From the IMG/VR virus record IMGVR_UViG_3300022752_000015, positions 124,001-188,000 of that record: a DNA stretch of 64,000 nt; one strand, 5' to 3'. Positions 18,161 through 58,753 of this stretch are shown here, one piece after another; position 1 is the stretch's first letter; each line of letters opens with the position of its first letter. A program made the position numbers and the translations under genes. The notes beneath the pieces are model-generated. The model worked only from the letters and a program-made list of their open reading frames with translations. It did not search any database and was not told where the DNA came from.

Positions 18161-18196
18161 TGTTATAAGGTAATTTACATTACCTTATTAGTTCAA
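18161..18196 (-). promoter_or_regulatory. Sigma70-like promoter, leaderless type, overlapped by a perfect 10-bp inverted repeat
   Basis: TTGAAC-N18-TACCTT-N6-ATG(18160); IR ataaggtaat-ttac-attaccttat at 18165-18188. Confidence 0.55.
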
Positions 18197-19125
18197 TCTT
18201 TGGGTTTTTTAGAAACTGCACGGCCAGACATGCGTTCCCAATCTCTGTCTTTTCTAACCTCAAGATTCTTTTCCCACGCAGCTTTAAGAACAGTCGGTTT
18301 AACCTCAAGATTTTTTGCAACGTCGATCATAGCATTGATGTCCTTAGGGAAACAGTGACCCCCGCTGCCAAAGTCACCATCAGGTCCAGGTACACTCCAG
18401 TGGCTTGATCCTAACCTAGAATCATACTTTGCATATTCAATTACCTTATCATAATCCACATTTAATCCGGATTTATCTAGGGCATTACAAACCTGATACA
18501 TCTCGTTTGCAAACGAAACCTTAACTGTCAGGAAGTTATTAGTGACATATTTCACCATCTCAGCTGTCGTTGACGAAGTTTTGATGAGTGGAACTTTTGG
18601 AAACGCTGTTTGAAAAACTTGTTTCACGGTATTAATCCACGGGCGAGGTCCACCAAGAATAATACGATTTTGATTTCTCATGTCATCTAGAGCGTTGGCC
18701 TCTGTGAGAAATTCTGGATTAAAAACTACATGAAGGCCTTGTTCCGAGAACATCTTGTTCCATCTCTCAGTAGAGCCAGGAGGAACCGTGGATTTTACTA
18801 CAGCAATTCTCTCGCCAGGTAAAGTTGCCAATTGCGAAAGAACACCTTCTACGATAGACAGATCCGCAGATCCGTCATCATACATCGGAGTCGGTAGACA
18901 CACAAAATACACTTTTGAGAAGTTTTCAGATGCTTCACATGACTTTACGAACTCATTTACATTAGTCGGGTGTAATCCTTCTGGTGTTGTTGGTTGCTTT
19001 CCTCCAGTACAGACTTTTCCTGTCTTGTCATGCACCAAGACGTCGAATCCTCTTTCAGCAAAGACAGTAGTAAGAGAGCCGCCAACAAACCCTTGACCTA
19101 CAACAGCAATAGATTGTTTCTTCAT
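18193..19125 (-). CDS. ugd: UDP-glucose/GDP-mannose 6-dehydrogenase family protein (short form)
   Basis: GQGFVG Rossmann motif, CLPTP, KSTVPPG, FNPEFL, AEMVKY, GGHCFPKD (catalytic Cys); only 310 aa. Confidence 0.9.
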   Translation of the reverse strand: MKKQSIAVVGQGFVGGSLTTVFAERGFDVLVHDKTGKVCTGGKQPTTPEGLHPTNVNEFVKSCEASENFSKVYFVCLPTPMYDDGSADLSIVEGVLSQLATLPGERIAVVKSTVPPGSTERWNKMFSEQGLHVVFNPEFLTEANALDDMRNQNRIILGGPRPWINTVKQVFQTAFPKVPLIKTSSTTAEMVKYVTNNFLTVKVSFANEMYQVCNALDKSGLNVDYDKVIEYAKYDSRLGSSHWSVPGPDGDFGSGGHCFPKDINAMIDVAKNLEVKPTVLKAAWEKNLEVRKDRDWERMSGRAVSKKPKD

Positions 19126-19160
19126 ACAAAGATTATAAGAAAAAATAAAAAAATGATCAA
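19126..19160 (-). promoter_or_regulatory. Sigma70-like promoter, leaderless type
   Basis: TTGATC-N17-TATAAT-N6-ATG(19125). Confidence 0.65.
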
Positions 19161-19162
19161 GA

Positions 19163-20068
19163 TTATTCTAACGCCTTAATAACAGTTTTCCATCCAACAT
19201 CATTCTTTATTACGTTCACTGATTCAATTATTTTGTCTTGAAGTTGATTCGCTTCTTTCAAGTTTCTTCTTATCACTTCAATTGCATTCTCAAATGAATC
19301 ATAAGTCATTATCGTAGAGATATTATTTTTAGGAACATAATTTTCTAATTCTTCTTCATAATCTCTAATGCTTATACAACCTCTAGCTGCGGCCTCAACA
19401 TCTTTAATCCACAGTGCATTTGCTGAGATGTTTTTTCCATTCACTTGCCAATTGACTTGCTCATTATGCACATAGATTTTTATATTTGACAAATTTTGCA
19501 AAAATTCTTGGTAAGGAGCAGGTTTCAGCACCTCGACAACAATTCCTTCACTTTTAAGATAATCAAAGAATTTTTTCCTATAAGGATGTAGTTGGCCACA
19601 AAAGCCTAAATCTATTTGTCGTGAAGATAATTCAGGAACAGCAGAACAATATTCTGGCAACATCCACATCTTCACAAATTTAGACCTTATTCCTTGAGAG
19701 TTGATAAAGTCGCTCCACCACTTCGACGTATTTAAGAAGGATAAAACATTCAACTCGTTATAAATCTTATGATATGAACCCTTGTATTGCGAATCATCTT
19801 TGAAAGATTCCCAAGGATCCTGTTCATAGATATAAATTTCTCTATTATCTAAAAACCTCTTAATTGTATGAACGTTGTTGTTTATTGTCCTAAGCTTTAA
19901 ACATGACAATATCCTATCATGGTTTGAAGATATTTTTTTATTCTTCAATATGTCATCAATTGTGCTAAAGGTCAATTCACACTCTTGACTTAAGGTTTTG
20001 AATAACTGATGTTGATAACAGTTAGACTGAATGTAAGACAAGTTGTCAATCAATACATGCAATTTCAT
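19163..20068 (-). CDS. Putative GT-B glycosyltransferase-like protein
   Basis: DLGFCGQLHPYRKKF...YQEFL...IYVHNE...KDVEAAARGC resembles CgeB/Glyco_trans_1_2-type C-termini; glyco-cluster context. Confidence 0.55.
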   Translation of the reverse strand: MKLHVLIDNLSYIQSNCYQHQLFKTLSQECELTFSTIDDILKNKKISSNHDRILSCLKLRTINNNVHTIKRFLDNREIYIYEQDPWESFKDDSQYKGSYHKIYNELNVLSFLNTSKWWSDFINSQGIRSKFVKMWMLPEYCSAVPELSSRQIDLGFCGQLHPYRKKFFDYLKSEGIVVEVLKPAPYQEFLQNLSNIKIYVHNEQVNWQVNGKNISANALWIKDVEAAARGCISIRDYEEELENYVPKNNISTIMTYDSFENAIEVIRRNLKEANQLQDKIIESVNVIKNDVGWKTVIKALE

Positions 20069-20769
20069 CTTTTTACTTTTTCTTTTGAGTAAGTTCTCTT
20101 AGCAATTTCAAAAGCATTTTGAAAATCTTCATCTCTATAATCAACATTTTCGTACGATAAAGACAACTTAAATCCCATTAGACACATGCCTCTGATTCTG
20201 TCAAAATCGTTTTTTTCCCAAGCAGAATAGACCTTATTAAGAATGTCTGATTGGTTCTTTTTACCTCTATGAAAGCCGTAATGAAATGCTTGAGATTCTG
20301 AAGAGTACCAGCAATGCTTCCCGGCAGGTATTAACTTTTCAGGTAATTGATTTCCGCGTAAAACGATATCATGACCCGTGTCTGCTCGATCAGGATACAA
20401 CTTATCAACTTTTGTTGCAACATTGACAGTGTTTTTTAAGCAAGTTAGTCCATATATCAAGCTGTCTGTCAAATAATCGTGTAACCAAGCTTGCGCACCT
20501 GTTACTCTAGAGTTACTTTCAAAAACTTCAACAAAGTTTTTTATAACTTCATTATGAGACAAGACAGTATCGGCATCAACCTTCAAGAAAAGTTGATGAT
20601 CTTTTTTAGCTTCATTCCACGCGGAAAATAATTTTTCATGAGCTTCTTTTTCTGGAAGATTAGAAACAACGTAATGTGTCAGTTCTACGCCTACTTGATT
20701 TTTTATTGATTCTTTACAAGTTTGAAAATCTAACTCTCCATGTTCCATGGTTCCAACAAAAATTTTCAT
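20065..20769 (-). CDS. Putative GT-A (GT2-like) glycosyltransferase
   Basis: FLKVDADTVL DxD motif after a hydrophobic strand; cluster context. Confidence 0.55.
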   Translation of the reverse strand: MKIFVGTMEHGELDFQTCKESIKNQVGVELTHYVVSNLPEKEAHEKLFSAWNEAKKDHQLFLKVDADTVLSHNEVIKNFVEVFESNSRVTGAQAWLHDYLTDSLIYGLTCLKNTVNVATKVDKLYPDRADTGHDIVLRGNQLPEKLIPAGKHCWYSSESQAFHYGFHRGKKNQSDILNKVYSAWEKNDFDRIRGMCLMGFKLSLSYENVDYRDEDFQNAFEIAKRTYSKEKVKR

Positions 20770-22076
20770 TTATCATTCCAATCTTGTCTTAACAAATACA
20801 TACAAATAGAATCATGATATTTTTCTTCTCTATACAACGATTCAACTTGTTTACCTTCTTTTTTGAACCCTAGATTCTTATAGACTTTTTGTCCCACCAC
20901 GTTGTATGATGCTGTTGTCAGCGAAACTCTATGTAAATTTAACGCGTTGAAACATACCTGAAGCATCAGCTTCCACATGAATTTTGCGTATCCTTTTCCT
21001 CTATGATTTTTGTGTATGTCCGCTCCTAACACACAATTGTTATTATTACGATCTATCGAATAGATCTTACAAAAGCCTACTTTTTCTTCATTAACGCAAA
21101 AAATATATCTTTTTTCTTTTTCTTTATGTAAAGAATTCCACCACCTCAAATGAGATTCTAAAGTAATAGGTTGTGGATTTGTCAAATTTTTTAGGACTTC
21201 AGGATCATTGTGCAGATCTACTAACCAATCATGATCATCGTCACAAACTTCTCTTAAAGAAAACAAGTCTTCTTTCTCACAAAAATGAGAATCTACAACT
21301 GAATAGAATTGACTAGAGATTTCAGAATTTTTAAACTTATGACTCATTGAACCTCTTTGATGTCCTACAAAGGGTAAATTATCTAATTGATACTCTTCAT
21401 GATAATCGTTGTTAGTTTTTATTATTTTTGCGTTTTTTGTAGGCTTTTCGTGAGTCAATATTTTATAAGAAATACTGTTTTCGTGTAGGAAACTAGGTAT
21501 TTGCCAGCCTGTATCTCTTAAAACTCGAAAGCCTATAGGTAATTGATATATTTCTGCTTCTAAATCGTTAGATATATCTAAATGAGATCCTTTATGAGGG
21601 GTAACGTCTATGCCAGAAAAATCTACGTTTTTTGACATAGCAAACCAAGTAAAGTTTGGTTTATTTTTATAAGTTTGAACGTTTCCAGAACCAGATGAAA
21701 ATCCGCCATAAGCTTCATATGATGAACCTAAAATATCAACTTTTGATAATTCATCTACAAGTAATTTATCCCATTCTTTAACTAACATGACTGTATCTGA
21801 ATCAGCAATCACATTAATTGAATTATTTTTTGATTTTATTTTAGAAAGAGCTAATTTAATTGCCTCACAATGTCCTCTAGTCCCTCTTTCGTTGTTAACA
21901 AAATGAGAAACTATTGATTTTGAGCTATGAAATTTGTTAAAAGAATATTCATCTAAACAGTAAGCATGAAATTTTAACTTGTTCTTATTACTAAGAAGTT
22001 GACTATAGTTTTTTTGCATATATTCAAAATAAGCAATTGAATTTTCGCTGACTGTAACATGAATATTAATTTTCAT
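20766..22076 (-). CDS. Fusion: GT-A-like N-terminal domain + GNAT (PseH/RimL-like) N-acetyltransferase
   Basis: N-part VIADSDTVML (DxD); C-part LREV...HNDPEV...HLRWW...VGFC...HRGKGYAK...LNLHRVSL...YKNLGFKKEG, a typical GNAT acetyl-CoA motif. Confidence 0.7.
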   Translation of the reverse strand: MKINIHVTVSENSIAYFEYMQKNYSQLLSNKNKLKFHAYCLDEYSFNKFHSSKSIVSHFVNNERGTRGHCEAIKLALSKIKSKNNSINVIADSDTVMLVKEWDKLLVDELSKVDILGSSYEAYGGFSSGSGNVQTYKNKPNFTWFAMSKNVDFSGIDVTPHKGSHLDISNDLEAEIYQLPIGFRVLRDTGWQIPSFLHENSISYKILTHEKPTKNAKIIKTNNDYHEEYQLDNLPFVGHQRGSMSHKFKNSEISSQFYSVVDSHFCEKEDLFSLREVCDDDHDWLVDLHNDPEVLKNLTNPQPITLESHLRWWNSLHKEKEKRYIFCVNEEKVGFCKIYSIDRNNNNCVLGADIHKNHRGKGYAKFMWKLMLQVCFNALNLHRVSLTTASYNVVGQKVYKNLGFKKEGKQVESLYREEKYHDSICMYLLRQDWNDK

Positions 22077-23211: not shown

Positions 23212-23212
23212 T

Positions 23213-24238
23213 TTAGTTCTTTCTATTAGTTGCAATCTCTTCTATCTTTAACCCTTGAAAATTATCTAAAGACATGTCAATAATTCCAAGCTCATTAAGT
23301 TTGGCAAAAAGTTGTTCTTTAGTCATGACATCGTCGGCACTAGTGTAAGTGAATCTGTTATTAGTTCCAGACTGATATGCAGGTCCTATTACGTAGTGAG
23401 TTTCTACATCTTTTGTCCTGACGGATTCAGATTCGTTAACAAGATCTTCATGTTTTTTCTCGCCTGGTCTCAAACCAATTATTTTAATTGGTTTTTTATA
23501 TAAGCTTGAAAAAATTTCTGCCAAATCTCCTATTTTCATCGCTGGTATTTTAGGGATCCAAGTTTCACCACTCTCTCCTCTTTTTAAAGCTTCTAAAATT
23601 AGATCTACACTGTCATCTAAAGTCATAACAAATCTAGTCATGTTTGGATCTGTTACTGTCAAATTTTCAGAATACTCAGCTTGATACTTAAAAAGAGGAA
23701 TTATACTTCCTCTAGATTCTAGAACATTTCCATACCTAGTGCACAAAAACTTAACGCCAGTTGAGTCATTCTTTGATTGACTAGTTACAAGACGTTCAGA
23801 TATCCCTTTACACATTCCGTAAACATTTACAGGAGAGCAAGCCTTGTCTGTACTGACAAATAAAACTTTTTCAACTTTCCAGTCTGATGCCCAAGATTGA
23901 GAAATATCTTTCACGGATTTAACGACATTTTGAGTTCCTAACAAATTTGTCATTACGCTTTCAAAAGGGCTAAGCTCACAAGTGTCAACTTGTTTTAGAG
24001 CAGCCGCAACAATTATGATTTCAGGTTTGTAATGAAGTATGACTTCTTTTACTCGATTATAATCTCTAATGTCTCCAACAAAAAACTCTACATCCGTAGA
24101 AGAATTAAGTTCATTCTTTATGGTCCAATGTTTGGCTTCATCTCTAGAATAAACTGCGATTTTATCTCCGTTTATCAAAAATCTAGAAATTAATTTTTTT
24201 CCTAATGAACCTGTTCCACCAAATATAAGATATTTCAT
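23213..24238 (-). CDS. UDP-GlcNAc 4,6-dehydratase (PseB/FnlA/CapD-like, Polysacc_synt_2 family)
   Basis: FGGTGSLG, YSRDEAK, GDIRD, AAALKQV, STDKACSPVNVYGMCK, RYGNVLESRGSIIP, GLRPGEK. Confidence 0.9.
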   Translation of the reverse strand: MKYLIFGGTGSLGKKLISRFLINGDKIAVYSRDEAKHWTIKNELNSSTDVEFFVGDIRDYNRVKEVILHYKPEIIIVAAALKQVDTCELSPFESVMTNLLGTQNVVKSVKDISQSWASDWKVEKVLFVSTDKACSPVNVYGMCKGISERLVTSQSKNDSTGVKFLCTRYGNVLESRGSIIPLFKYQAEYSENLTVTDPNMTRFVMTLDDSVDLILEALKRGESGETWIPKIPAMKIGDLAEIFSSLYKKPIKIIGLRPGEKKHEDLVNESESVRTKDVETHYVIGPAYQSGTNNRFTYTSADDVMTKEQLFAKLNELGIIDMSLDNFQGLKIEEIATNRKN

Positions 24239-24275
24239 CGTTCAAATTATAACTTTTGCAAAAAAAACTGTTCAA
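24239..24275 (-). promoter_or_regulatory. Sigma70-like promoter, leaderless type
   Basis: TTGAAC-N18-TATAAT-N7-ATG(24238). Confidence 0.65.
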
Positions 24276-27143: not shown

Positions 27144-27164
27144 ATTTGCCTCCTTATCTACTCT

Positions 27165-30979: not shown

Positions 30980-30983
30980 TAGA

Positions 30984-32906
30984 TTATAACATAATTTTGG
31001 GCTGAGATTTGTTCACAACAATATGATAAGTTTTTGTCTTACCATCCCATTTTTTATGCCAAATCCAACCGCCTAAACTTTCCGAAAGTTCAGTAGCTTT
31101 AGAAGCTATCATTTCATCTGTTACTTGCGACCAAGGGACATCAAACATCATATTTGATTCTGCTGTGTCTTCATAAGATTTTCCTGACAAAGATTCCCAA
31201 TGTTTGGTCCAATATTTTTTGTAAAGCTTAATCTTTCTATTCAAATCAAACCAACTATAATGAAACACACCAGGTAAATTATCAACGACTTTATTGAACC
31301 ACTCTTGATAATTTTTTATTGCGTCAGGATCTCCTAAAACAGCTTTATTACGAACATCATCAACTTCAGAAGTGTAAAAAGTTACGTGAGGTATTCTTTC
31401 GTAAGATGATGAATCTATCATGTCACATCCATCTCCATAAGCCGCATAAAGATTTCCATTTTCATCAGTTCGACGAGCATCTAAAGGTATTCCGTGAGTG
31501 ATATTTTTCTTATTTTTACTTAATCTCCACTTCCAAGGAAGAACATCGGCTCTAACTTTCTCAGGGCCTCCCCAATATTCAACAACTGGCAATGATATAA
31601 TATCTACGCTAGTTGGGAACTTAGCACATAAATTTAATATTTTTTCACAATCTTCTTCATGCACTATTTCGTCTGAATCCATTTGCCAACAAAAATCTCC
31701 TGTGCACATGGATCTTGCTTCGGCTTTTTGCATTCCGTCAAAAACAGCAAATCTAGGATGACTCCAATCTCTTATCACTTGTTTCAGTTTGATCTTTGTT
31801 TCAGTAGATGACAATTCTTGAAGCTTCTCCCAAGTGCCGTCTGTAGAACCTCCATCAACAATACAAACCTCCTCACAAAAAGGAAGCATAGACTTAACAC
31901 ACTGTATAAATGGATATTCTTGAGACAATGCATTATAAACCGTCACATATCCGCTGATATTAGGACGATATTCCATCATCTTTTTTATGTAATTCCAAAA
32001 TAGAGTTGGCGCTCCAAATAAGTACTCTTCAATCTCTTCAACGTTATTTGTAGAGAACCAATCTTCATTTTTATGTTGTACGTTTTCATTCAAATGAAGT
32101 TTGCATCCCAGAAGCTTCGCTTCTATGACCATTCTTGGGCAGGTATCAGCGCCTGCTGGAAGATATACAAAACCTTCTGCATTAGCTAACTTTTCCAACA
32201 TGACTTCGTAAGCTACATTCCAGACAACTTCATATTCTACTTTGTTGTCTAAGCACCACTTTTCTGCAGCTTGAGCTCCTTTTACCCATGATTCTGATCC
32301 TAAGACTATCCACCTTTTTCGATCTGATGTTGATAAAGAAACAGCTTCTCTGAGCCACTTGATGGTACCTAGAGTTTTTTTCGAAAATACGCTTGATAAG
32401 ACAACATTATCTTTTTCAGATAAAAATGGGAACATTCTATGATAACGATCTTTTTGCGCCTCTGACATCCACCATAGAACTTTTGCTCCATAATAAAAAG
32501 CAGAAATTAATTTTCCATTGAATTGGTTGTGACAATCACATGGAGATCCGGTTTTCTCAGAATGTTTTTCAGGAGATCTGTACTTGCAATATTTGTAATC
32601 ATATTCTAAAATAGAATAATTCAAATTTCCAATTATGCTTGGAACTAGTTCCATGTTCATTTGAGCAAAATTGCCAAAGATCCAAAACTTATTGGTTCCT
32701 TGAGCTAACAAATGCATAGTCAGCTCTTTTGAACGAATTTTCATGTAAGGCAAAGGACATTCATCAATCAAAGCCTGCGTGGTTAGTTCTGCTCCGCCGA
32801 CATAATCTTCTGAAAAAAGATCAGCTACAAAAATAACCTTAACTTCATCAGGGATGATGAGAGGTCTAGAACTATTTTCGAATACGCTTTTATTGAATGT
32901 TTGCAA
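30984..32906 (-). CDS. Two-domain glycosyltransferase (GT-B + GT2 fusion)
   Basis: N-part GGAELT...KGA...DTCPRMVIEAKLLGCKL (GT-B); C-part ISGYVTVYNA...CIVDGGSTDGT...WQMDSDEIV (GT2); TTG start with GAGG upstream. Confidence 0.8.
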   Translation of the reverse strand: MQTFNKSVFENSSRPLIIPDEVKVIFVADLFSEDYVGGAELTTQALIDECPLPYMKIRSKELTMHLLAQGTNKFWIFGNFAQMNMELVPSIIGNLNYSILEYDYKYCKYRSPEKHSEKTGSPCDCHNQFNGKLISAFYYGAKVLWWMSEAQKDRYHRMFPFLSEKDNVVLSSVFSKKTLGTIKWLREAVSLSTSDRKRWIVLGSESWVKGAQAAEKWCLDNKVEYEVVWNVAYEVMLEKLANAEGFVYLPAGADTCPRMVIEAKLLGCKLHLNENVQHKNEDWFSTNNVEEIEEYLFGAPTLFWNYIKKMMEYRPNISGYVTVYNALSQEYPFIQCVKSMLPFCEEVCIVDGGSTDGTWEKLQELSSTETKIKLKQVIRDWSHPRFAVFDGMQKAEARSMCTGDFCWQMDSDEIVHEEDCEKILNLCAKFPTSVDIISLPVVEYWGGPEKVRADVLPWKWRLSKNKKNITHGIPLDARRTDENGNLYAAYGDGCDMIDSSSYERIPHVTFYTSEVDDVRNKAVLGDPDAIKNYQEWFNKVVDNLPGVFHYSWFDLNRKIKLYKKYWTKHWESLSGKSYEDTAESNMMFDVPWSQVTDEMIASKATELSESLGGWIWHKKWDGKTKTYHIVVNKSQPKIML

Positions 32907-33030: not shown

Positions 33031-33045
33031 TTTAGGAGGATGTAT

Positions 33046-33648
33046 ATGTCGAGAAAAAAATCTAACACTCAAGTAAGTTCTCCAAATTTTCCTGATAAAC
33101 ATCTTGACATCAAAGATTCTCCTGACAGCATTGAAACAAAAAAGACGTTGGATGCTATTGAAAGCAATAGACAGCAGATTTTAGAGATGCAAAAAAGAAT
33201 CTTATCGGCTCCTGCTATGAATGGTGGCTTCTCTAATTTAATGTACAAAATTGAAAAAATAGAGCAATCGCAAACGCAGTTGGTTGTGAAAGTCGATGAG
33301 ATAAGAGAAGTCTTATATGATCCTGATAATGGTTTATACGCAAGAATAAAAAACGTTGAAAATAGTTCAGCTGAAATTGAAAGAGTTGAAGAGTTGGAAG
33401 AACAACTACATTCCATACAAAGCTGGAAAATTCATGAAGAAAAATTAGCTCAAAAAGAAGAGCTCAATGATGAAAATCTTGCAAAGATTATAAATCAACA
33501 TTCTGAGGTAATTAAAGAATTACAGTCTTGGTACCAAAAACAAGCAGCTTTTACTAGATGGCTTTCAATTGCAGTAGGTACAGCAATCTTAGGTGCTATT
33601 GGTAAGATAATACATGCTTACATCAATTCTCATGTTCAAATTATTTGA
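33046..33648 (+). CDS. Coiled-coil protein with C-terminal transmembrane helix (XhlA/holin-like architecture)
   Basis: Heptad-rich body, then WLSIAVGTAILGAIGKII; AGGAGG at 33034-33039 favours the ATG at 33046. Confidence 0.55.
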   Translation: MSRKKSNTQVSSPNFPDKHLDIKDSPDSIETKKTLDAIESNRQQILEMQKRILSAPAMNGGFSNLMYKIEKIEQSQTQLVVKVDEIREVLYDPDNGLYARIKNVENSSAEIERVEELEEQLHSIQSWKIHEEKLAQKEELNDENLAKIINQHSEVIKELQSWYQKQAAFTRWLSIAVGTAILGAIGKIIHAYINSHVQII

Positions 33649-33680
33649 ACATTAAACAAATAATTGGCTACATTGATTTT
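33645..33680 (+). promoter_or_regulatory. Sigma70-like promoter, leaderless type
   Basis: TTGAAC-N18-TACATT-N6-GTG(33681). Confidence 0.6.
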
Positions 33681-34874
33681 GTGGCAATTTTTCTAAAAAA
33701 AGAAATACTTGAATCATTTAAAGAAGTCTGTAATGATTTAAGAAATTTTTCAAATACAGAAAAAGTATTATTCCTTGAAAAAGATCAAGTTTTGATTAAA
33801 ACTTCATTTCAAGGAATTTTTAATTTAAAATATTCTAATCAGCTAAAATTAGCTATTCATAGGTTGATAGTAGAACACTGCATTTTATCAGAAAAAATAT
33901 CTCCTGGAGGGTTTGACTTAACATTACATAAAATTGTAAGTTCTGATTTAAACAATCTAGATAAAGCTTCAAATAAAGCTACTTTGAATGATTTAAAAAA
34001 TATAATTGTTTCTCAAACTAAAGACGATGACTTTCTGAACAAAATGTTATTTGATGCCGTGCTTTTAGCTGGATTTGGCGGTAGAATATCTGTAGAAAAA
34101 TCCAGTAATAATTTTGCTTCGATTGAAGTGATTGATGGTTTCACATTTAAAGTAAAAACTTTTGAAGAAAAACCTATCAAAATAGCAAATCCTAAAATCA
34201 TTGTTATTGATGGATTTGTTGAATCTGTTTCTGAAATTAATTTATTGCTTGAAGGTGCAAGTGTAACAAAGCATCCTGTAGTCTTAATAACTAGAGGACT
34301 TCATGAAGAAGTACTAAATACGATAAAAGTTAATAAAATTAGAGGAGTTATTGAAGTTTATCCTATCGTAGTAGAGTTTAATCTAGAAGGTATAAATAAG
34401 CTTAACGACATCTCAATAGCTTGTTCTACATCTTTGTTTTCTAGCAATTTAGGCCAGCTAATTTCTAACATTTCTATAGATGATGCAAAAAAAATAGATG
34501 AAATTTCTATTTATGTTAATTCAATTTGCATAAAGAATCAAGCATCAAAATCTGATGTTAATTCTCATATAAAATTCTTATTGTCTAAAAGAGAAGAATC
34601 AAAAAATGTAGAAGAAATTTACGAAGATAGAATAAGATCTTTATCTTCCAATAATGTACTCATTAGACTTCCAGATACTAACGATTTTGTTGTAAAAAGA
34701 CAATCAATTGACTATTGTCTTAGGTCGATAAAATCTATGATAGAATTTGGAGTATTAAATGATTCTAAACCTTATGGATCTTATGTCTCTTCTAATTTAT
34801 ATTCTAAATTGTTTTTTGAAAAATTAAGTTCATTAGGTGCAGTAATACATAACTCTGCCATTATGTCATACTAG
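33681..34874 (+). CDS. Degenerate GroEL/Cpn60-like chaperonin
   Basis: AGFGGRISVEKS...IEVIDGF...IANPKIIVIDGFVESVSEINLLLE...HPVVLITRG...LNTIKVNKIRG...EDRIRSLS...KRQSIDYCLRSIKSMIEFGV aligns by eye with the GroEL intermediate and apical regions; no GDGTTT motif; start moved to GTG 33681. Confidence 0.7.
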   Translation: MAIFLKKEILESFKEVCNDLRNFSNTEKVLFLEKDQVLIKTSFQGIFNLKYSNQLKLAIHRLIVEHCILSEKISPGGFDLTLHKIVSSDLNNLDKASNKATLNDLKNIIVSQTKDDDFLNKMLFDAVLLAGFGGRISVEKSSNNFASIEVIDGFTFKVKTFEEKPIKIANPKIIVIDGFVESVSEINLLLEGASVTKHPVVLITRGLHEEVLNTIKVNKIRGVIEVYPIVVEFNLEGINKLNDISIACSTSLFSSNLGQLISNISIDDAKKIDEISIYVNSICIKNQASKSDVNSHIKFLLSKREESKNVEEIYEDRIRSLSSNNVLIRLPDTNDFVVKRQSIDYCLRSIKSMIEFGVLNDSKPYGSYVSSNLYSKLFFEKLSSLGAVIHNSAIMSY

Positions 34875-35676: not shown

Positions 35677-35697
35677 GTAATAAATTATATCTTACTT

Positions 35698-35940: not shown

Positions 35941-35946
35941 TAGATC

Positions 35947-39355: not shown

Positions 39356-39769
39356 ATGCCAGCACCTAGAGCAGTCCTAGCAGATATCTTAAACTTGGGA
39401 TTAGATCCAAAAAAATCCCATAGATCTTTGTCTAAAGATGGAAAGCTTAAGAATGCTTCTTTAGAAAAGAAGAAAGATCTTAAACCAGGTTTTGTTTTTG
39501 TACCGACGCAAGAAGAATCCGCCAAGGTGGAAACTCTAAAGCAAGAAAAGCATACCGAAATTATGGACGTTAGTCCTAACGTTGAAAACGAAAAAGTTAC
39601 CATTACTACTGATGCTTCCTTAAAAGAAAAAGAAGCTGACACTACATCCACAATTATTAAAGAAAAAGTGGAAGTTAATTTTTCAACTGATAAAAGTGTT
39701 GATGAACAGTCAGAAAAGCAAAAGAAAAAGCAATTATTTCAAAAGAAATCATTATCAAACAACAGCTGA
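39356..39769 (+). CDS. Hypothetical Lys/Glu-rich protein
   Basis: 137 aa; GAGG RBS; MPAPRAVLADI head followed by a low-complexity tail. Confidence 0.55.
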   Translation: MPAPRAVLADILNLGLDPKKSHRSLSKDGKLKNASLEKKKDLKPGFVFVPTQEESAKVETLKQEKHTEIMDVSPNVENEKVTITTDASLKEKEADTTSTIIKEKVEVNFSTDKSVDEQSEKQKKKQLFQKKSLSNNS

Positions 39770-40017
39770 AACTTTAACTTTTGAATGATGTTTTTTTCTA
39801 TTTGACAAATTCTCATTCTTGTCAATCCATATATTTTTCCTATATTTTGTAGGGTATATGGTCCTTTTTGAGCTGCAATGATTACACAGTTTTGATTATT
39901 TTTATCATTCATGTAATTTTTGCAGCTGTCTTTATTGCAGTTGACGTTGTATTTAGCATGCGTCTCAAAGCAAGTAGCTGATTGTTTTAGTATTGGTAAA
40001 CTTTTGCCTTTTGTCAT
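39739..40017 (-). CDS. Stand-alone sigma70 region-4 HTH protein with Cys-rich N-terminus
   Basis: PYTLQNIGKIYGLTRMRICQIEKNIIQKLK matches sigma region 4.2 (TL.EIG..F..TRERIRQIE..AL.KL); C..C...C...C N-part. Confidence 0.7.
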   Translation of the reverse strand: MTKGKSLPILKQSATCFETHAKYNVNCNKDSCKNYMNDKNNQNCVIIAAQKGPYTLQNIGKIYGLTRMRICQIEKNIIQKLKFQLLFDNDFF

Positions 40018-40080
40018 TAGAATTTGTTTATACTTTAGGCAAAAAAAGGTACATTGTTCAAAGAAGATATTGAAATCAAC

Positions 40081-41472: not shown

Positions 41473-41502
41473 ATTGTTTGGTTGCATATAATGACATCAA
41501 AC

Positions 41503-41512
41503 ATAATTTATT
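41503..41512 (+). promoter_or_regulatory. Putative late-promoter motif ATAATTTATT
   Basis: Three nt before the ATG of the structural module; the identical 10-mer precedes 35676(-) at 35679-35688. Confidence 0.45.
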
Positions 41513-41515
41513 GCT

Positions 41516-55400: not shown

Positions 55401-55412
55401 CAGATCTAGTTC

Positions 55413-55805
55413 ATGACAGTAAAAAAGAGAAAGAAAAAAGGAAGGTATCATAGAGGTACTCATAATTCTCCTCTGGCTGGCGAGTGTAAATTTCGTTCAG
55501 GATGGGAGCAAAAGTACATGGAGTATTTAGATGCTGACCCGAACGTAGAATCTTGGTCTTACGAAAAGATCGTTATCAAATACATCTCTAATAAGTCTTC
55601 AGGAAAAATTCGAAAGTACTATCCTGATTTTTTTGTGAAGATGAAAAATGGCGATCTACTCGTCGTGGAGATCAAACAAAAAAGGAAGTTAGATTCCTCG
55701 GCCGTCAAGAAAAAATCGGCAGCGGCACAACAGTGGTGCATGATCAACAATGCCTCTTTCTTAATTCTTACTGAATTAGAATTAAAAGATATGGGAATCT
55801 TATAA
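55413..55805 (+). CDS. Head completion nuclease (T4 gp4 / TnsA-N-like)
   Basis: FRSGWEQKYMEYLD...WSYE..VIKY...YYPDFFV...VVEIK...K..AAQQWC....FLILTE. Confidence 0.8.
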   Translation: MTVKKRKKKGRYHRGTHNSPLAGECKFRSGWEQKYMEYLDADPNVESWSYEKIVIKYISNKSSGKIRKYYPDFFVKMKNGDLLVVEIKQKRKLDSSAVKKKSAAAQQWCMINNASFLILTELELKDMGIL

Positions 55806-55845
55806 AAAGATTTTACCTGATGTCACCTGATGATGATAATCAGAT

Positions 55846-56403
55846 GTGTCAAAAATTGTTTTAGGTCTTGACGTTTCAACTTCAGTGACAGGTGTTTGCG
55901 TTATAGATAAAGATGTTCAACCTGATGACAAGGGTTCTCACATCCTTCTCCTCGACAAAGTAGAGTTCAAGAAGTGTAAAACATTTTGGGAGAAGTCTGA
56001 TGTTATTGAATCAGTTTTATCAGACATATTCCATCGACAGAAACTAGCACCAGTCGTATTCGCTCTTGAGGAACCGTTGTTGGGATTTCAAAAAGGAATG
56101 TCATCAGCAACAACCATCACCACCCTCATGAGGTTTAATGGTATAGTTTCTTATATCGGTAGAAGAATATTTCAGGTGGACCCAACCTACATCTCATCCT
56201 CGCACGCCAGAAAACTATGCGGAATAAAGATGCAACGAACATCTATCGCCGGAATGAATGGTAAGGAGCAGGTCTTCAAACACATGTCTGAAAACGACCT
56301 GAAGCATGTGGATTGGCCGAAGAAGAAAAATGGTCAACCCGTCGATTGGAGCCGTGATGCTACAGATGCATATGTAATAGCTCGAGCTGCATGTCTCTTA
56401 TAA
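55846..56403 (+). CDS. RuvC-like Holliday junction resolvase
   Basis: VLGLDVSTSVTG...ALEEP...L.RFNG...ARK...DATDAYVIA acidic catalytic residues; upstream TTTACC-N17-GATAAT-N5-GTG. Confidence 0.75.
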   Translation: MSKIVLGLDVSTSVTGVCVIDKDVQPDDKGSHILLLDKVEFKKCKTFWEKSDVIESVLSDIFHRQKLAPVVFALEEPLLGFQKGMSSATTITTLMRFNGIVSYIGRRIFQVDPTYISSSHARKLCGIKMQRTSIAGMNGKEQVFKHMSENDLKHVDWPKKKNGQPVDWSRDATDAYVIARAACLL

Positions 56404-56433
56404 TTTTTGTAAATGATATTTCTTAACTATAAT

Positions 56434-56444
56434 ATAATTAGTTA
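56434..56444 (+). promoter_or_regulatory. Putative late-promoter motif ATAATTAGTTA
   Basis: Identical 11-mer at 57788-57798 and variant ATACATAGTTA at 62190-62200, each in a short intergenic gap before a gene. Confidence 0.5.
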
Positions 56445-56465
56445 CATCCCAAAGGAGTATTTCAC

Positions 56466-56765
56466 ATGAAGATTACCCCTTCGCAATTACGTAAAATCAT
56501 AAAAGAAGAAGTCAAAAGATTGTCAGAAGGTCCTGAAGAGGAACAAAAGGTTTTTTATGACGCTTTACGTCAAGCAGAAGATGCCTTAATGAAAGTCGTA
56601 GAGATCGTAGAAAAATCCGGAAAGGGAAGCCCTGAAAAATTTGGAGGACAAGGTTCTCAACAGGTTAATCTAAAGGCGGTCCTTGCACAGATTTCCAACC
56701 AAAGAGAAATTGAACAAGACGCACCAGATTATGGCGGCGGTTTATTCGATCTGCCTGGCAAATAA
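56466..56765 (+). CDS. Hypothetical protein with IIKEE-type N-terminal leader (possible internal head protein)
   Basis: MKITPSQLRKIIKEEVKRLSE; AAGGAG RBS. Confidence 0.55.
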   Translation: MKITPSQLRKIIKEEVKRLSEGPEEEQKVFYDALRQAEDALMKVVEIVEKSGKGSPEKFGGQGSQQVNLKAVLAQISNQREIEQDAPDYGGGLFDLPGK

Positions 56766-56801
56766 TTGAACATATAACTCTACAAGTATTACGATGCTAT
56801 C
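56766..56801 (+). promoter_or_regulatory. Sigma70-like promoter, leaderless type
   Basis: TTGAAC-N18-TACGAT-N6-GTG(56802). Confidence 0.6.
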
Positions 56802-57785
56802 GTGGCCATTCGTTCGGTCTCCGATAGCATTAATTTTTTTGAATCTGTTTTTGGTAAGGGGCGTATATCTTCCAACGGTATCAACTTTGACGTTCGTTGT
56901 CCAATATGCGCCTCGGCAGATCCAACGAAAAAGAAACTTTCTATTCGCACTGACACCACCGCAAATCATTGTTGGGTTTGTGGGTGGAAGTCTCGTACCA
57001 TAGTTCCTCTAATAAGAAAATTTGGAACTCAAAATCAACTAGCAGAATTCAAAGAGTTGTTTGGACTGTTCGATAACTCTTTTCATCTGGTTACTGGTGA
57101 AAAAGAAGAAAAACAAAAGCTCGAACTTCCAAAAGATTTTAGGCTTTTGACGTTAGCAAATAGTATGGATCCTGACGTAAAGGCCGCCTGGCGCTATGTG
57201 TACTCTCGAGGACTTACTGACAGAGATGCTTGGTACTTCAAACTAGGAGTTTCTGATGAGCCTAGATGGAAGAGAAGAATCATCATGCCTTCATTTGATG
57301 CGCAAGGAAATTTAAATTTTTTTGTAGCTAGAGCGATCGATAAGGACAAAAAGCCAAAGTATGATAGCCCAGACGTAGATAAAAATCCTATCGTCTTTAA
57401 CGATCTAAACATAGATTGGTCAAAGAGATTGGTGCTAGTAGAAGGTTCATTCGATCTAGTAAAGTGCCCAGAAAACTCTACTGCAATATTAGGATCGGAT
57501 CTTGACGAGAGACACGAAATCTTTAATAAAATCTTACTACACAACACACCAATTGCGTTATCTTTAGATGGAGACATGTGGGACAAAAAGACTCCTAAAA
57601 TAGCGAAAAAGTTGCAGGAATATAATGTAGACGTCATCGTAGTTGATGTTCGTCCGTGGGGAGACCCAGGTAGCATGTCTAAAATCGAATTTGAAGAAGC
57701 GTTAAAAGAAGCAAAGCAAATTAGCTGGGACGATAACTTTAGTAGAAAGTTAAAAAAAGCTACTGCAGTAAGTTTTGCATTTTAG
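56802..57785 (+). CDS. DNA primase (DnaG/T4 gp61-like)
   Basis: Zn finger CPIC...HCWVC; YVYSRGL...RRIIMPS...FFVAR...PKY; TOPRIM LVEGSFD...LDGD...GDPG. Confidence 0.85.
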   Translation: MAIRSVSDSINFFESVFGKGRISSNGINFDVRCPICASADPTKKKLSIRTDTTANHCWVCGWKSRTIVPLIRKFGTQNQLAEFKELFGLFDNSFHLVTGEKEEKQKLELPKDFRLLTLANSMDPDVKAAWRYVYSRGLTDRDAWYFKLGVSDEPRWKRRIIMPSFDAQGNLNFFVARAIDKDKKPKYDSPDVDKNPIVFNDLNIDWSKRLVLVEGSFDLVKCPENSTAILGSDLDERHEIFNKILLHNTPIALSLDGDMWDKKTPKIAKKLQEYNVDVIVVDVRPWGDPGSMSKIEFEEALKEAKQISWDDNFSRKLKKATAVSFAF

Positions 57786-57800
57786 TGATAATTAGTTATT

Positions 57801-58715
57801 GTGAGAAAGCACGTAATTACAGAAGCCAGGATTAGAGAAATAATCCAAGAAGAAATAGCAATTCAACAGCTCCTTGAAGAAGGATTTTTAGATTCTGCTA
57901 AAGATGCAATAAAAAAATTGTCAGTTGCAGTTACTAATAGATTTAAGGAAGCAGCAGACAAGTGGGCAAACGTTATCTCTGAAAAGATAAACATGATGCA
58001 GACGATCCCTCCAGAGATATTGACAATCGTCAATGCACTCGAAGAAGGAAAGAAGTCGACAGGAGAATCAATAGAGTTAGATGAAACGTTAAAGCTAGCT
58101 CAGTCTCTCAGTAAAGAAAATCCTCTTGCTTCTGCTGAAGAAGAATTATCTGGTCCTATCTACGCAAAAGCAAAAGAATTAAAAGAAATGTATGTTGTAT
58201 TGTCCGATAATTCTTACGTCAAACAAAGAAAAAACTTACACGAAGCAGGAATAATAACTGGAGCAGGTATTGGATTAGCGATCATCGGAGGTTTACCTTT
58301 GTTATTTAAAGGGTTAACTAAGCTGGCTGTCTATTTGAAAGCTGAAAAATTAGCTTCAATCTTTGAAAAAGCTGAACATGTTACTCACGCTTTTGAGCAA
58401 AAATTTATAAAATTTGTAATCCCTAGCAAACTTTCATATTTCGTATATAAGTTTTTAGCTGAAAAAGGATTTCATACGGCTGGTGAAAAAGAAGTTTTAT
58501 CTTACGAAAGATATAAATCTTCGAAATCAGAGCAAAAAACAGCAGAATTAATCTATAAGGCTTTATTGATATATTTTGCTTTTCAAGGACTAGCAGGCGC
58601 TCTCAAGGCTGGTGCATCCTTGTTAGGATTTGTTGAAGGAACTGCAACAACAGTGAAAGGCATCGAACTAGCAAAAGGATTTGCTGACGTTCGAAAAATT
58701 GTCAGCGGAGCATGA
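57801..58715 (+). CDS. Hypothetical protein with IIQEE-type leader and hydrophobic helices (possible internal/ejected virion protein)
   Basis: MRKHVITEARIREIIQEEIAIQQLLEEG...NLHEAG then GIITGAGIGLAIIGGLPLLF and ALLIYFAFQGLAGAL hydrophobic segments. Confidence 0.55.
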   Translation: MRKHVITEARIREIIQEEIAIQQLLEEGFLDSAKDAIKKLSVAVTNRFKEAADKWANVISEKINMMQTIPPEILTIVNALEEGKKSTGESIELDETLKLAQSLSKENPLASAEEELSGPIYAKAKELKEMYVVLSDNSYVKQRKNLHEAGIITGAGIGLAIIGGLPLLFKGLTKLAVYLKAEKLASIFEKAEHVTHAFEQKFIKFVIPSKLSYFVYKFLAEKGFHTAGEKEVLSYERYKSSKSEQKTAELIYKALLIYFAFQGLAGALKAGASLLGFVEGTATTVKGIELAKGFADVRKIVSGA

Positions 58716-58718
58716 GAT

Positions 58719-58753
58719 ATGAACATACGCATTATCTACGTTACATTTAGATA
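58719..58753 (+). promoter_or_regulatory. Sigma70-like promoter, leaderless type
   Basis: ATGAAC-N17-TACATT-N6-ATG(58754). Confidence 0.55.

What the first reader, a model, noticed from the sequence alone, without database searches (positions are those of the whole stretch)
18161..58753. Recurrent sigma70-like promoters placed for leaderless translation
Seen: a -35/-10 pair followed by only 5-7 nt and then the start codon, with no Shine-Dalgarno, before the Cas4-like gene (TTGAAC-18-TACCTT-6), ugd (TTGATC-17-TATAAT-6), the dehydratase (TTGAAC-18-TATAAT-7), the GroEL-like gene (TTGAAC-18-TACATT-6-GTG), the RuvC-like gene (TTTACC-17-GATAAT-5-GTG), primase (TTGAAC-18-TACGAT-6-GTG) and Mre11-Rad50 (ATGAAC-17-TACATT-6). 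Inference: transcription starts at or next to the start codon, so many early/middle enzymes are made from leaderless mRNA. The conserved TGAAC -35 element may be phage- or host-specific and is a clue to the host. It also corrects one ORF start (33681).
Basis: partly seen in the sequence, partly recalled or inferred. Interest (0 to 1): 0.65.

Follow-up and report, generated by a model that had tools for sequence, protein, structure and literature searches.

The report
Leaderless-mRNA promoters in a lake phage
In this uncultured lake-water phage (relatives reach about 300 kb), dozens of genes carry a bacterial-type promoter exactly six bases before the start codon, so their messages probably begin at the start codon; this way of expressing genes is known from Actinobacteria, Deinococcus-Thermus and Thermus phages, and finding it in a new phage group hints at the host.

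Summary
All seven motif strings lie at the stated places. Generic sigma-70 matches are no commoner than in shuffled sequence. But a -35 (kTGmAm), a 16-19 nt spacer and a -10 (TANNNT) are locked 6 nt before start codons. In the window, 7 genes have this against 0.35 expected. In the 212.8-kb contig, 20 genes have it at exactly 6 nt against 0.3 at any other offset. Sixteen unrelated small genes at the GC-rich end share one 36-bp promoter that ends at ATG. Orthologues at 68-94% protein identity keep the -35, the -10 and the 6-nt gap while the bases in between change. A complete 298-kb relative shows the same peak. These starts are ATG or GTG, never TTG. A 1-nt indel in a close relative supports the corrected start at 33681. 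No RNA data could be obtained. The host is unknown; a freshwater Nanopelagicaceae genome has the same geometry. The phage also encodes a sigma factor with a degenerate region 4.2 and a separate region-4.2-like protein. Verdict: a new member of a known kind.

The parts
18161..18196 (-). Promoter of the Cas4-like gene: -35 TTGAAC (18191-18196), 18-nt spacer, -10 TACCTT (18167-18172), 6-nt gap ATAACA, then ATG
   Evidence: In 22 distinct orthologous upstream regions the gap is 6 nt while the 6-mer varies.
17342..18160 (-). PD-(D/E)XK (Cas4-like) nuclease gene, 272 aa, predicted leaderless
   Evidence: Pfam PF12705, E = 2.5e-17. The N-terminus MQE...LPTGK is conserved from the first ATG, with in-frame indels, in 29 sequences.
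19126..19160 (-). Promoter of the ugd-like gene: TTGATC-17-TATAAT-6-ATG
   Evidence: Relatives are mixed: some keep a 6-8 nt gap, others have the same promoter type with a GGAG-bearing leader.
18193..19125 (-). UDP-glucose/GDP-mannose dehydrogenase-like gene, 310 aa (N-terminal and central domains only)
   Evidence: Pfam PF03721 and PF00984.
24239..24275 (-). Promoter of the dehydratase gene: TTGAAC-18-TATAAT-7-ATG
   Evidence: Kept in relatives at 81-94% identity as TTGAAC or TTAAAC-18-TATAAT/TAAAAT/TACAAT with a 6-7 nt gap.
23213..24238 (-). PseB/FlaA1-like NDP-sugar 4,6-dehydratase gene, 341 aa
   Evidence: Pfam PF02719, E = 2e-82. Homologues are named UDP-GlcNAc 4,6-dehydratase by their sources.
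33645..33680 (+). Promoter of the GroEL-like gene: TTGAAC-18-TACATT-6-GTG. The TTG of the -35 is the false longest-ORF start.
   Evidence: L079 and L080 have a 1-nt deletion in the spacer (17 nt) and -10 TACAAT, which puts TTG 33645 out of frame.
33681..34874 (+). Chaperonin (GroEL)-like gene, 397 aa from the corrected GTG start
   Evidence: phrog_5725, E = 1.3e-20. No Pfam hit.
55812..55845 (+). Weak promoter of the RuvC-like gene: TTTACC-17-GATAAT-5-GTG
   Evidence: Relatives keep a TTTTAC/TTTACC word and a weak -10 (AACAAT, TATAGT) 5-7 nt before the start.
55846..56403 (+).
   Evidence: Only a sub-threshold Pfam hit (DUF3882, E = 0.006). The function was not confirmed.
56766..56801 (+). Promoter of the primase-like gene: TTGAAC-18-TACGAT-6-GTG
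   Evidence: About 13 distinct relatives (68-75% aa identity) keep kTGAAm-17/18-TACnGT-6-GTG with variable 6-mers.
56802..57785 (+). Primase-like gene, 327 aa, GTG start, predicted leaderless
   Evidence: Weak DnaG_N hit. The GTG start is conserved in relatives.
58719..58753 (+). Promoter of the Mre11-Rad50 (SbcCD) fusion gene: ATGAAC-17-TACATT-6-ATG
   Evidence: TTGAAC is kept in relatives at 55-62% identity, with gaps of 6-9 nt and a few of 13-14 nt.
58754..61891 (+). SbcD-SbcC fusion gene, 1045 aa
   Evidence: Pfam Metallophos plus SbcC Walker B.
30980..31016 (-).
   Evidence: Pfam PF00535.
41482..41515 (+). Further site: TTGCAT-16-TAATTT-6-ATG before the 327-aa gene 41516-42499
35677..35689 (-). 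-10-only site: TATAAT-7-ATG before the 271-aa gene 34861-35676. No good -35.
   Evidence: ATAATT words pile up 6-7 nt before starts contig-wide.
57787..57800 (+). -10-only site: GATAAT-8-GTG before the 304-aa gene 57801-58715
40018..40061 (-). Same promoter type with a short leader: TTGAAC-18-TAAAGT, then 14 nt, then ATG
   Evidence: It shows that not every TTGAAC promoter abuts the start codon.
39739..40017 (-). 92-aa protein P0001: Cys-rich N-terminus plus a sigma-70 region-4.2-like helix-turn-helix. A candidate -35 reader encoded by the phage.
   Evidence: PF04545, 37 bits. Sequence. Residues 52-83 align to region 4.2 of SigA chains. Homologues are present in 4 of 5 related phage records tested.

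Best explanation
These are sigma-70-type promoters placed so that transcription starts on the first base of the coding sequence.

**Mechanism.** RNA polymerase holoenzyme binds a -35 of the form kTGmAm. The variants are TTGAAC in the window, GTGAAA, and GTGCAAAG elsewhere in the genome. It also binds a TANNNT -10 lying 17-18 bp downstream. The polymerase normally starts at a purine 7 bp past the last T of the -10. A 6-nt gap therefore puts +1 on the A of ATG or the G of GTG. The mRNA has no 5' untranslated region and no Shine-Dalgarno. The ribosome with initiator tRNA engages the 5'-terminal AUG or GUG directly. Downstream genes of each unit are reached by overlap or coupling, or by ordinary SD sites.

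**Shown here.**
- The motifs exist.
- They are locked to start codons.
- The architecture is conserved across a clade of lake phages.
- The start codons are restricted to ATG and GTG.
- A freshwater actinobacterial genome has the same geometry.

**Inferred.**
- The actual transcription start sites.
- That translation is leaderless.
- Which sigma reads the promoters.
- That the host belongs to a lineage that translates leaderless mRNA efficiently. Actinomycetota is the best guess.
For: **1. Placement.** The composite promoter sits 6 nt before 20 longest-ORF starts, against 0.29 per other offset. In the window, 7 genes have it against 0.35-0.39 expected, with 0 of 2000 shuffles reaching 7. TANNNT alone occurs 21 times at d = 6, against about 7 at other upstream offsets and about 2.6 at internal starts.

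**2. One cassette, unrelated genes.** Sixteen promoters read GTGCAAAG-N16-TAnnnT-N6-ATG, with ATG always 36 nt from the first G. They stand before 16 proteins that show no pairwise similarity.

**3. Comparative evidence.**
- Cas4-like orthologues at 70-94% identity: 22 distinct upstream regions keep TTGAAC-17/18-TAnnnT-6-ATG, with 19 different 6-mers.
- Primase orthologues: about 13 keep the 6-nt gap and the GTG start.
- An independent complete relative, G005 (297,894 bp): TANNNT at d = 6 occurs 36 times against about 8, and the composite 18 times against 0-2.
- More distant relatives (44-46% identity) instead have TATAAT followed by a leader with AGGAG. Marine relatives show no peak.

**4. 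Internal consistency.** The 24 leaderless-type first starts are 23 ATG, 1 GTG and 0 TTG, against 49 TTG among 224 other starts (P = 0.006). The base at -1 is C or T in 20 of 24. In mycobacteria a 5'-terminal ATG or GTG, but not TTG, supports leaderless translation (PMC4633059).

**5. Coding starts at that ATG**. An indel supports the 33681 start.

**6. Precedent.** Most transcripts of Thermus phages YS40 and Lalka27a are leaderless (bioRxiv 10.64898/2026.04.20.719267). A -10 next to the ORF is common in Deinococcus-Thermus (PMC12340547) and in Actinobacteria (PMC3160421).

**7. A lake bacterium with the same geometry.** In a Nanopelagicaceae chromosome, TANNNT lies at d = 6 before 67 of 365 first starts, against a background of about 3.5. 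Opitutaceae and Gemmatimonadales contigs show nothing.
Against: - There are no RNA data. The only runs labelled RNA-Seq held short, low-depth contigs that the tool judged probably DNA, so no 5' ends were seen.
- Generic promoter matches are not enriched in this AT-rich DNA, so any single site could be chance. The RuvC-like site is weak.
- Some orthologues have gaps of 8-10 or 13-14 nt. One TTGAAC promoter in the window has a 14-nt leader. The design therefore tolerates short leaders.
- Some relatives express ugd from the same promoter type with an SD-bearing leader.
- The host is unidentified. In E. coli-like hosts leaderless mRNAs, above all those starting with GUG, are poorly translated.
Confidence: 0.8

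Rival explanations
1. The promoters are real but transcription starts a few bases upstream, or the true start codon lies downstream. The mRNAs would then have ordinary or short leaders and would not be translated in the leaderless way.
For: Gaps of 8-10 and 13-14 nt occur in some orthologues. The gene at window 40017 has a 14-nt leader. Some ugd relatives have GGAG leaders behind the same promoter type.
Against: The modal gap is exactly 6 nt in the phage, in a complete relative and in orthologue sets. The Cas4-like N-terminus is conserved from the first ATG, with in-frame indels and no SD inside. TTG starts are absent. A 1-3 nt leader would still be leaderless in function.
Confidence: 0.1
2. 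The matches are chance products of AT-rich intergenic DNA, picked out by eye.
For: Generic sigma-70 matches number 72 against 81 in shuffles. Strict TTGAAC-N17-19-TANNNT gives 9 against 4.3, with 3 of 100 shuffles reaching 9.
Against: The offset, shuffle and internal-start controls speak against chance. So do conservation in many orthologues, replication in G005 and the 16 identical cassettes.
Confidence: 0.02
3. The conserved words next to start codons are not promoters. They would be another signal, such as a binding site for a regulator or an A/T-rich translation enhancer, with transcription coming from elsewhere.
For: There is no direct transcription evidence. Many genes in the window have neither an SD nor a promoter, so some unconventional initiation signal must exist anyway.
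Against: The two-block structure, with a 17-18 bp spacer and the invariant T, A and T of TANNNT, is the anatomy of a sigma-70 promoter. The same geometry marks leaderless genes in a Nanopelagicaceae genome and in published TSS-mapped systems. The bases between the -10 and ATG are free to vary. That fits a spacer, not a binding site.
Confidence: 0.05
4. This rival concerns who reads the promoters, not what they are. The kTGmAm -35 words would be read by phage-encoded factors, not by the host primary sigma. These factors are the RpoD-like sigma with a degenerate region 4.2, acting together with a separate region-4.2-like protein (P0001) or with the small HTH protein encoded just after the sigma gene.
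For: The phage sigma has regions 1.2 to 4.1, but its region 4.2 is short and acidic: YKITQEQVEKIS here and YFISPEELVALE in G005. P0001 matches region 4.2 of SigA. The sigma was found in 2 of 5 related records tested, with a weak sub-threshold match in a third. P0001 was found in 4 of 5. Both are in G001 and in the complete genome G005. TTGAAC and GTGCAAA are clade-specific words.
Against: TTGAAC-17/18-TATAAT is close enough to the universal consensus for any primary sigma. P0001 is itself behind a TTGAAC promoter. The promoter classes were not assigned to times of infection.
Confidence: 0.25

Closest known systems
Leaderless transcription programmes of Thermus phages phiYS40 and Lalka27a
   Same: These are phages that use host RNA polymerase with TANNNT -10 elements. 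Most of their transcripts start on the A or G of the initiator codon, and they have several promoter classes with distinct consensus sequences (bioRxiv 10.64898/2026.04.20.719267, which cites Sevostyanova et al. 2007 for YS40).
   Different: - The habitat here is lake water, seen in 16 studies, not hot springs.
- There is no DNA match to any isolated phage, and proteins are only about 30% identical to those of isolated phages.
- The record is 212.8 kb and about 59% complete; relatives reach 298 kb.
- The phage carries its own sigma-like genes.
- The leaderless state is inferred here, not mapped.
Leaderless genes of Actinobacteria and Deinococcus-Thermus (-10 motif adjacent to the ORF)
   Same: TANNNT lies about 6-7 nt before an ATG or GTG start and there is no SD. 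This holds for 19-39% of genes in those phyla (PMC3160421; PMC12340547; PMC4633059). I measured the same peak in a freshwater Nanopelagicaceae chromosome.
   Different: Those are cellular genes, usually with a weak -35. The phage promoters have strong, nearly invariant -35 words and occur as repeated cassettes.
Phage lambda cI mRNA from PRM (classic single leaderless phage mRNA; from my own knowledge)
   Same: A phage mRNA that begins at the AUG.
   Different: Lambda has one regulatory transcript in an SD-dependent host. Here at least 37 units (about 15% of genes) share the design.
Jumbo phage phiKZ transcription map
   Same: A large phage with many short early units, each behind a conserved promoter.
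   Different: phiKZ uses its own multisubunit polymerases, has 5' UTRs of 31-40 nt, and no leaderless transcript was detected (PMC8244752). Leaderless design is therefore not a general trait of jumbo phages.
Split or two-piece sigma factors: T4 gp55 with gp33, Bacillus subtilis SigO-RsoA (from my own knowledge; relevant only to the side observation)
   Same: The sigma functions for -10 recognition and for the upstream or flap contact lie on separate polypeptides.
   Different: No interaction or function was tested here. The phage sigma keeps regions 1.2 to 4.1 in one chain.

Membership tests
Sigma-70-type (-35/-10) bacterial promoter | -10 hexamer with T at position 1, A at 2 and T at 6 (TANNNT) | tested here: met
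   Six of the seven reader sites have it; the RuvC-like site has GATAAT. All 16 class-A cassettes have it.
Sigma-70-type (-35/-10) bacterial promoter | -35 hexamer resembling TTGACA, placed 16-19 bp upstream of the -10 | tested here: met
   TTGAAC, TTGATC or ATGAAC at 17-18 bp. GTGCAA at 18 bp in all class-A sites. Kept in orthologues.
Sigma-70-type (-35/-10) bacterial promoter | More frequent than chance as a bare consensus match | tested here: not met
   72 matches against 81 +/- 9 in shuffles. The evidence comes from placement and conservation, not from frequency.
Sigma-70-type (-35/-10) bacterial promoter | Directs initiation by RNA polymerase holoenzyme | not testable with these tools
   No usable RNA reads.
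Leaderless mRNA gene | Transcription start coincides with the first base of the start codon | not testable with these tools
   Inferred only, from the 6-nt gap between the -10 and the start.
Leaderless mRNA gene | -10 element about 6-7 nt upstream of the start codon, as a sharp peak across genes | tested here: met
   20 genes at d = 6, 2 each at d = 7 and 8, and about 0.3 at other offsets. Replicated in G005 and in orthologue sets.
Leaderless mRNA gene | Start codon ATG or GTG (purine at +1), not TTG or CTG | tested here: met
   23 ATG, 1 GTG and 0 TTG among the leaderless-type starts, against 22% TTG among other starts (P = 0.006). The criterion comes from PMC4633059.
Leaderless mRNA gene | No Shine-Dalgarno upstream of the start | tested here: met
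   None of the composite sites in the window has an SD-like 4-mer. The gap is too short to hold one.
Leaderless mRNA gene | The protein really begins at that codon | tested here: inconclusive
   For the Cas4-like gene, the N-terminus is conserved and indels are in frame. For the GroEL-like gene, an indel excludes the upstream TTG. No proteomic data.
Relative of Thermus phages phiYS40 or Lalka | Sequence relatedness to those phages | tested here: not met
   No megablast hit in the phage collection. Thermus phages are not among the listed tblastn hits for the helicase or SbcCD. The resemblance is in strategy only.
Actinobacterial phage | Marker of an actinobacterial host (WhiB gene, or DNA shared with host genomes) | tested here: not met
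   No WhiB in G000, G001, G002, G003 or G004. Against 201 Nanopelagicales genomes only the conserved sigma region 2 and the tRNA-Glu matched, at 67-82% identity. The host remains unknown.

The most novel reading that the evidence does not exclude
A widespread clade of lake phages of about 300 kb runs its non-structural gene programme almost wholly from leaderless mRNAs. It reads at least one of its promoter classes with a phage-made two-piece sigma. One piece is an RpoD-like protein whose region 4.2 has lost its DNA-contacting residues. The other is a separate small protein carrying a region-4.2 helix-turn-helix (window 39739-40017, or the HTH gene just after the sigma gene), which recognises the clade-specific -35 words TTGAAC and GTGCAAA. 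If so, the phage would control both who transcribes and how ribosomes are recruited.
Probability: 0.15. Interest if true: 0.75.

Novelty: new member of a known kind. Interest (0 to 1): 0.55.

Why it matters
1. **Annotation.** It gives a rule that fixes start codons, and so N-termini, in a large and common group of uncultured lake phages. Examples are 33681 here and several internal starts elsewhere in the contig.
2. **Host clue.** Ordinary gene content failed to give a host. The host must translate 5'-terminal AUG and GUG well. Among lake bacteria tested here, a Nanopelagicaceae (Actinomycetota) genome has that geometry, while Opitutaceae and Gemmatimonadales contigs do not.
3. **Range.** Genome-wide leaderless expression in phages would extend from hot-spring Thermus phages to temperate freshwater jumbo phages.
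4. **Parts.** The 36-bp class-A cassette is a compact, portable expression element that could be tested as a leaderless promoter.
5. **Testable question.** A sigma with a degenerate region 4.2, together with a stand-alone region-4.2-like protein, raises a concrete question about how -35 recognition can be divided between proteins.

Tried and rejected
**RNA evidence.** The look-up of sequencing runs found the DNA in lake and freshwater metagenomes of 16 studies. Only two runs were labelled RNA-Seq. Laid on window 54001-60000 (6,000 letters), they gave short contigs of 150-270 nt at low depth. The tool judged them probably DNA. No starts or ends were reported, so nothing can be said about transcript ends.

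**Host identification.**
- No near DNA match in the phage collection. The best isolated-phage protein matches are about 30% identical and come from many host phyla.
- No WhiB, no psbA, no S21 or S1.
- The sigma protein as a query against genome contigs found nothing.
- UvsE homologues are all environmental phage contigs. The atlas search gave viral clusters.
Its many Actinomycetota titles carry no weight.
- DNA of the contig's right end against 201 Nanopelagicales genomes matched only sigma region 2 and tRNA-Glu.

**Possible lineage match.** The 'moraphage' lineage (PMC12619734) was considered. No identifier or marker links it to this contig, so this is left open.

**Bacteroidota host considered and set aside.** The promoters are not of the TTTG / TAnnTTTG type, and AAGGAG is enriched upstream of genes.

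**Calls that failed.**
The job was not run.
- The phiYS40 paper (PMC1885378) is not held. It is cited only through papers that cite it.

**Signal too blurred to use.** A position-frequency matrix over all upstream regions mixed the gene classes and was too blurred. It was replaced by offset histograms.

No other genetic code was used.

Full report
**What the window is.** The window is bases 124001-188000 of a single 212,804-bp virus record. IMG/VR classes the record as linear and CheckV estimates it at about 59% complete. GC is 41% overall and 31-40% in the window, rising to 58-64% in the last 7 kb. No isolated phage is close. Megablast finds nothing, and the helicase and the SbcD-SbcC fusion are about 30% identical to proteins of various jumbo phages. 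IMG/VR holds many relatives. One is a 278-kb contig whose SbcCD protein is identical, and another is a complete 297,894-bp genome with terminal repeats. Near-identical DNA occurs in lake and freshwater metagenomes from 16 studies.

**The observation.**
- PD-(D/E)XK, UDP-glucose dehydrogenase domains, a PseB-like dehydratase and Metallophos plus SbcC are supported by Pfam.
- The GroEL-like name rests on a PHROG match.
- The primase and RuvC-like names rest on weak hits only.

For the bare consensus that test is in fact met. The scan finds 72 sigma-70-like sites in 17001-36500 against 81 +/- 9 in shuffles. The strict TTGAAC word with a TANNNT gives 9 against 4.3. What is not random is the placement. 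I called genes across the contig and asked, at every offset from 0 to 44 nt, how often a composite site ends that far from the longest-ORF start. The composite is a -35 of form kTGmAm, a 16-19 nt spacer and TANNNT.
- Twenty genes have it at exactly 6 nt and two each at 7 and 8 nt. The mean at every other offset is 0.29 (P about 2e-23).
- 2645 internal in-frame start codons give only 1-4 at each of offsets 5-8.
- In the window alone, 7 of 54 genes have it. The expectation is 0.39 from other offsets and 0.35 from shuffles, and none of 2000 shuffles reached 7.
- TANNNT alone peaks at 6 nt with 21 genes, against about 7 at other upstream offsets.
- A further set has a good TATAATT-like -10 at 7-8 nt without a recognisable -35.

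By the strict rule, 37 starts in the contig are of this kind. Five sit at an internal candidate start in the low-GC body of the contig. Several more are class-A genes, where the cassette marks an ATG 12 or 21 codons inside the longest ORF.

**Promoter variants.** Three variants share one frame, with xTG 23-24 nt before the -10.
- TTGAAC dominates in the window and at 25-77 kb of the contig.
- GGTGAAAA occurs at the left end.
- GTGCAAAG occurs 16 times on the minus strand between 207.0 and 212.7 kb. Each time a TAnnnT (TATACT, TAAGGT, TAGGGT or TAAGTT) starts 24 nt on, and ATG lies exactly 36 nt from the first G.

The 16 proteins behind that cassette (28-247 aa) show no pairwise similarity. The cassette is therefore conserved in its own right and is not a by-product of gene duplication.

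**Comparative evidence.**
- Cas4-like gene. For relatives at 70-94% protein identity, 22 distinct upstream sequences read TTGAAC (or ATGAAC)-17/18-TAnnnT-6-ATG. The six bases of the gap take 19 different forms. One relative has a 7-nt gap and a handful have gaps of 8-10 nt.
- Primase-like gene. About 13 distinct relatives (68-75% identity) keep kTGAAm-17/18-TACnGT-6-GTG. Three instead have a stop-ATG junction with the upstream gene.
- SbcCD fusion. TTGAAC is kept, with gaps of 6-9 nt and a few of 13-14 nt.
- RuvC-like gene. Relatives keep a TTTTAC word and a weak -10 at 5-7 nt.
- Dehydratase. Only close relatives keep the arrangement.
- ugd. The picture is mixed. Some relatives have the same promoter type followed by a leader of about 10 nt with GGAG.
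- More distant relatives of the Cas4-like gene (44-46% identity) have TATAAT followed by a leader with AGGAG. The marine relatives of the SbcCD gene show no offset peak. The design therefore belongs to one freshwater clade.
- The complete relative G005 repeats the whole-genome result. TANNNT at 6 nt occurs 36 times against about 8, and the composite 18 times against 0-2. Most of its sites carry the GTGCAAA word.

**Consistency with leaderless initiation.**
- The 24 first starts with the composite are 23 ATG and 1 GTG. None is TTG, although 22% of other starts are TTG (P = 0.006). The base before the start is a pyrimidine in 20 of 24. A purine at +1 after a pyrimidine is the usual start context.
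- In mycobacteria a 5'-terminal ATG or GTG is necessary and sufficient for leaderless translation, TTG is not, and GTG works poorly in E. coli (PMC4633059).
- The Cas4-like protein is conserved from its first codon, and its length differences are in frame.
- For the GroEL-like gene, two close relatives have a 1-nt deletion in the promoter spacer (18 to 17 nt). That puts the longest-ORF TTG at 33645, which is the TTG of the -35 itself, out of frame with the gene.

**Mechanism proposed.** RNA polymerase holoenzyme binds the -35 and the -10. The 6-nt gap places the normal initiating position on the first base of the start codon. The transcript has no leader and is translated by direct engagement of its 5'-terminal AUG or GUG. 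The later genes of each unit overlap or abut their neighbours or have SD sites. Only about a quarter of window genes have even a 4-nt SD-like word, though AAGGAG is enriched upstream of genes contig-wide. Shown: the motifs, their placement, their conservation and the codon restriction. Inferred: the start sites, the mode of translation and the sigma involved.

**Who reads the promoters.** The phage encodes an RpoD-like sigma (G000:203263-204096, outside the window) with regions 1.2, 2, 3 and 4.1. Pfam region 4 is not detected. The stretch that aligns to the -35 recognition helix is short and acidic, both here and in G005. A small gene with a helix-turn-helix-like motif follows it in both genomes. 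Inside the window, gene 39739-40017 encodes a 92-aa protein. It has four cysteines in its N-terminal half and a C-terminal half that matches sigma region 4.2. It is conserved in relatives, including a marine one. Whether these proteins read any of the -35 words is open. TTGAAC-17/18-TATAAT is close enough to the general consensus for a host primary sigma.

**Host.** No direct link was found (see Tried and rejected). As a compatibility test I ran the same offset scan on named lake bacteria reached through another search.
- In 400 kb of a Candidatus Nanopelagicaceae chromosome, TANNNT lies 6 nt before 67 of 365 first starts and 7 nt before 19. The background is about 3.5, an excess of about 0.27 per gene.
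- 200 kb of an Opitutaceae MAG and 200 kb of a Gemmatimonadales MAG show no excess.
- The phage and G005 give 0.11 and 0.09 per gene.

Published surveys place leaderless genes mainly in Actinobacteria and Deinococcus-Thermus, with fewer in Acidobacteria, Aquificae and Deltaproteobacteria (PMC3160421). A freshwater actinobacterial host is therefore the best guess. The guess rests on analogy only. The 60% GC of the early-looking region and the size of the phage do not fit the small, low-GC Nanopelagicales well.

**Comparison with what is known.** The closest known case is the transcription strategy of Thermus phages phiYS40 and Lalka27a, where mapped transcripts mostly begin at the initiator codon and promoter classes differ by time of expression. 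The resemblance is in strategy. There is no sequence relatedness. The cellular counterpart is the '-10 next to the ORF' pattern of Deinococcus-Thermus and Actinobacteria. phiKZ, the best-mapped jumbo phage, has no leaderless transcripts.

**Verdict.** It is a new member of a known kind. The side finding of a sigma with a degenerate region 4.2 and a separate region-4.2-like protein is the most novel lead.

Noticed in passing
G000:C1:207000-212700 (outside the window, minus strand; locus L075): A GC-rich (58-64%) array of 16 small unrelated genes (28-247 aa). Each sits behind the same 36-bp cassette GTGCAAAG-N16-TAnnnT-N6-ATG. It looks like an early or host-takeover block. Its GC is about 25 points above that of the window.
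   Followed up: partly
G000:C1:203263-204096, minus strand (L076:1063-1896): A phage-encoded RpoD-like sigma (277 aa) with regions 1.2 to 4.1. Its region 4.2 is degenerate and acidic, and Pfam region 4 is not detected. The same architecture is present in the complete relative G005.
   Followed up: partly
window 39739-40017, minus strand: A 92-aa protein with a Cys-rich N-terminus and a C-terminal stretch that matches the -35-binding helix-turn-helix of primary sigmas (region 4.2). It is conserved in freshwater relatives and in one marine relative.
   Followed up: partly
L076:517-831, minus strand (G000 about 202717-203031); G005 homologue at L135:523-810: A small gene (104 aa; 95 aa in G005) just downstream of the sigma gene. 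It carries a helix-turn-helix-like motif (NYRDIADTM...SSARNYVLRVMRKF), and its position is conserved in both genomes. It has no family hit.
   Followed up: no
window 14880-32906, minus strand: An 18-kb run of sugar-nucleotide and glycosyltransferase genes: two GT genes, a ugd-like gene lacking the C-terminal domain, a PseB-like dehydratase, a GT2 gene and others. This is unusual bulk for a phage. The PseB-like protein is 63-72% identical to many environmental homologues.
   Followed up: partly
window 33681-34874 compared with L079/L080; window 58754-61891 compared with L001/L031: The same related contigs are 100% identical in the SbcCD protein, 94% in the dehydratase and only 88% in the GroEL-like protein. 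This mosaic divergence suggests recombination among co-occurring strains.
   Followed up: no
L127 and L128 (Cas4-like relatives at 44-46% identity); marine SbcCD relatives L033-L063: Distant relatives use TATAAT plus an AGGAG-bearing leader, or show no offset peak. The leaderless design seems to have been gained or lost within this phage lineage, presumably with a change of host.
   Followed up: partly
G007 (Candidatus Nanopelagicaceae chromosome), first 400 kb, loci L243-L262: About a quarter of genes in this abundant lake actinobacterium have TANNNT 6-7 nt before the start codon. The consensus is TAGnCT with C at -1, and the -35 is very weak.
   Followed up: partly
window, all 54 called genes: Only about 14 genes have even a 4-nt SD-like word, and many have neither an SD nor a promoter. 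Translation of internal genes probably relies on overlap or coupling, or on an unknown signal.
   Followed up: no
G000:C1:204457-205392 (L076:2257-3192, minus strand) and G000:C1:200209-200281: A UV damage endonuclease (UvsE) gene with hundreds of phage-borne homologues at 56-96% identity, and a single tRNA-Glu(TTC).
   Followed up: partly
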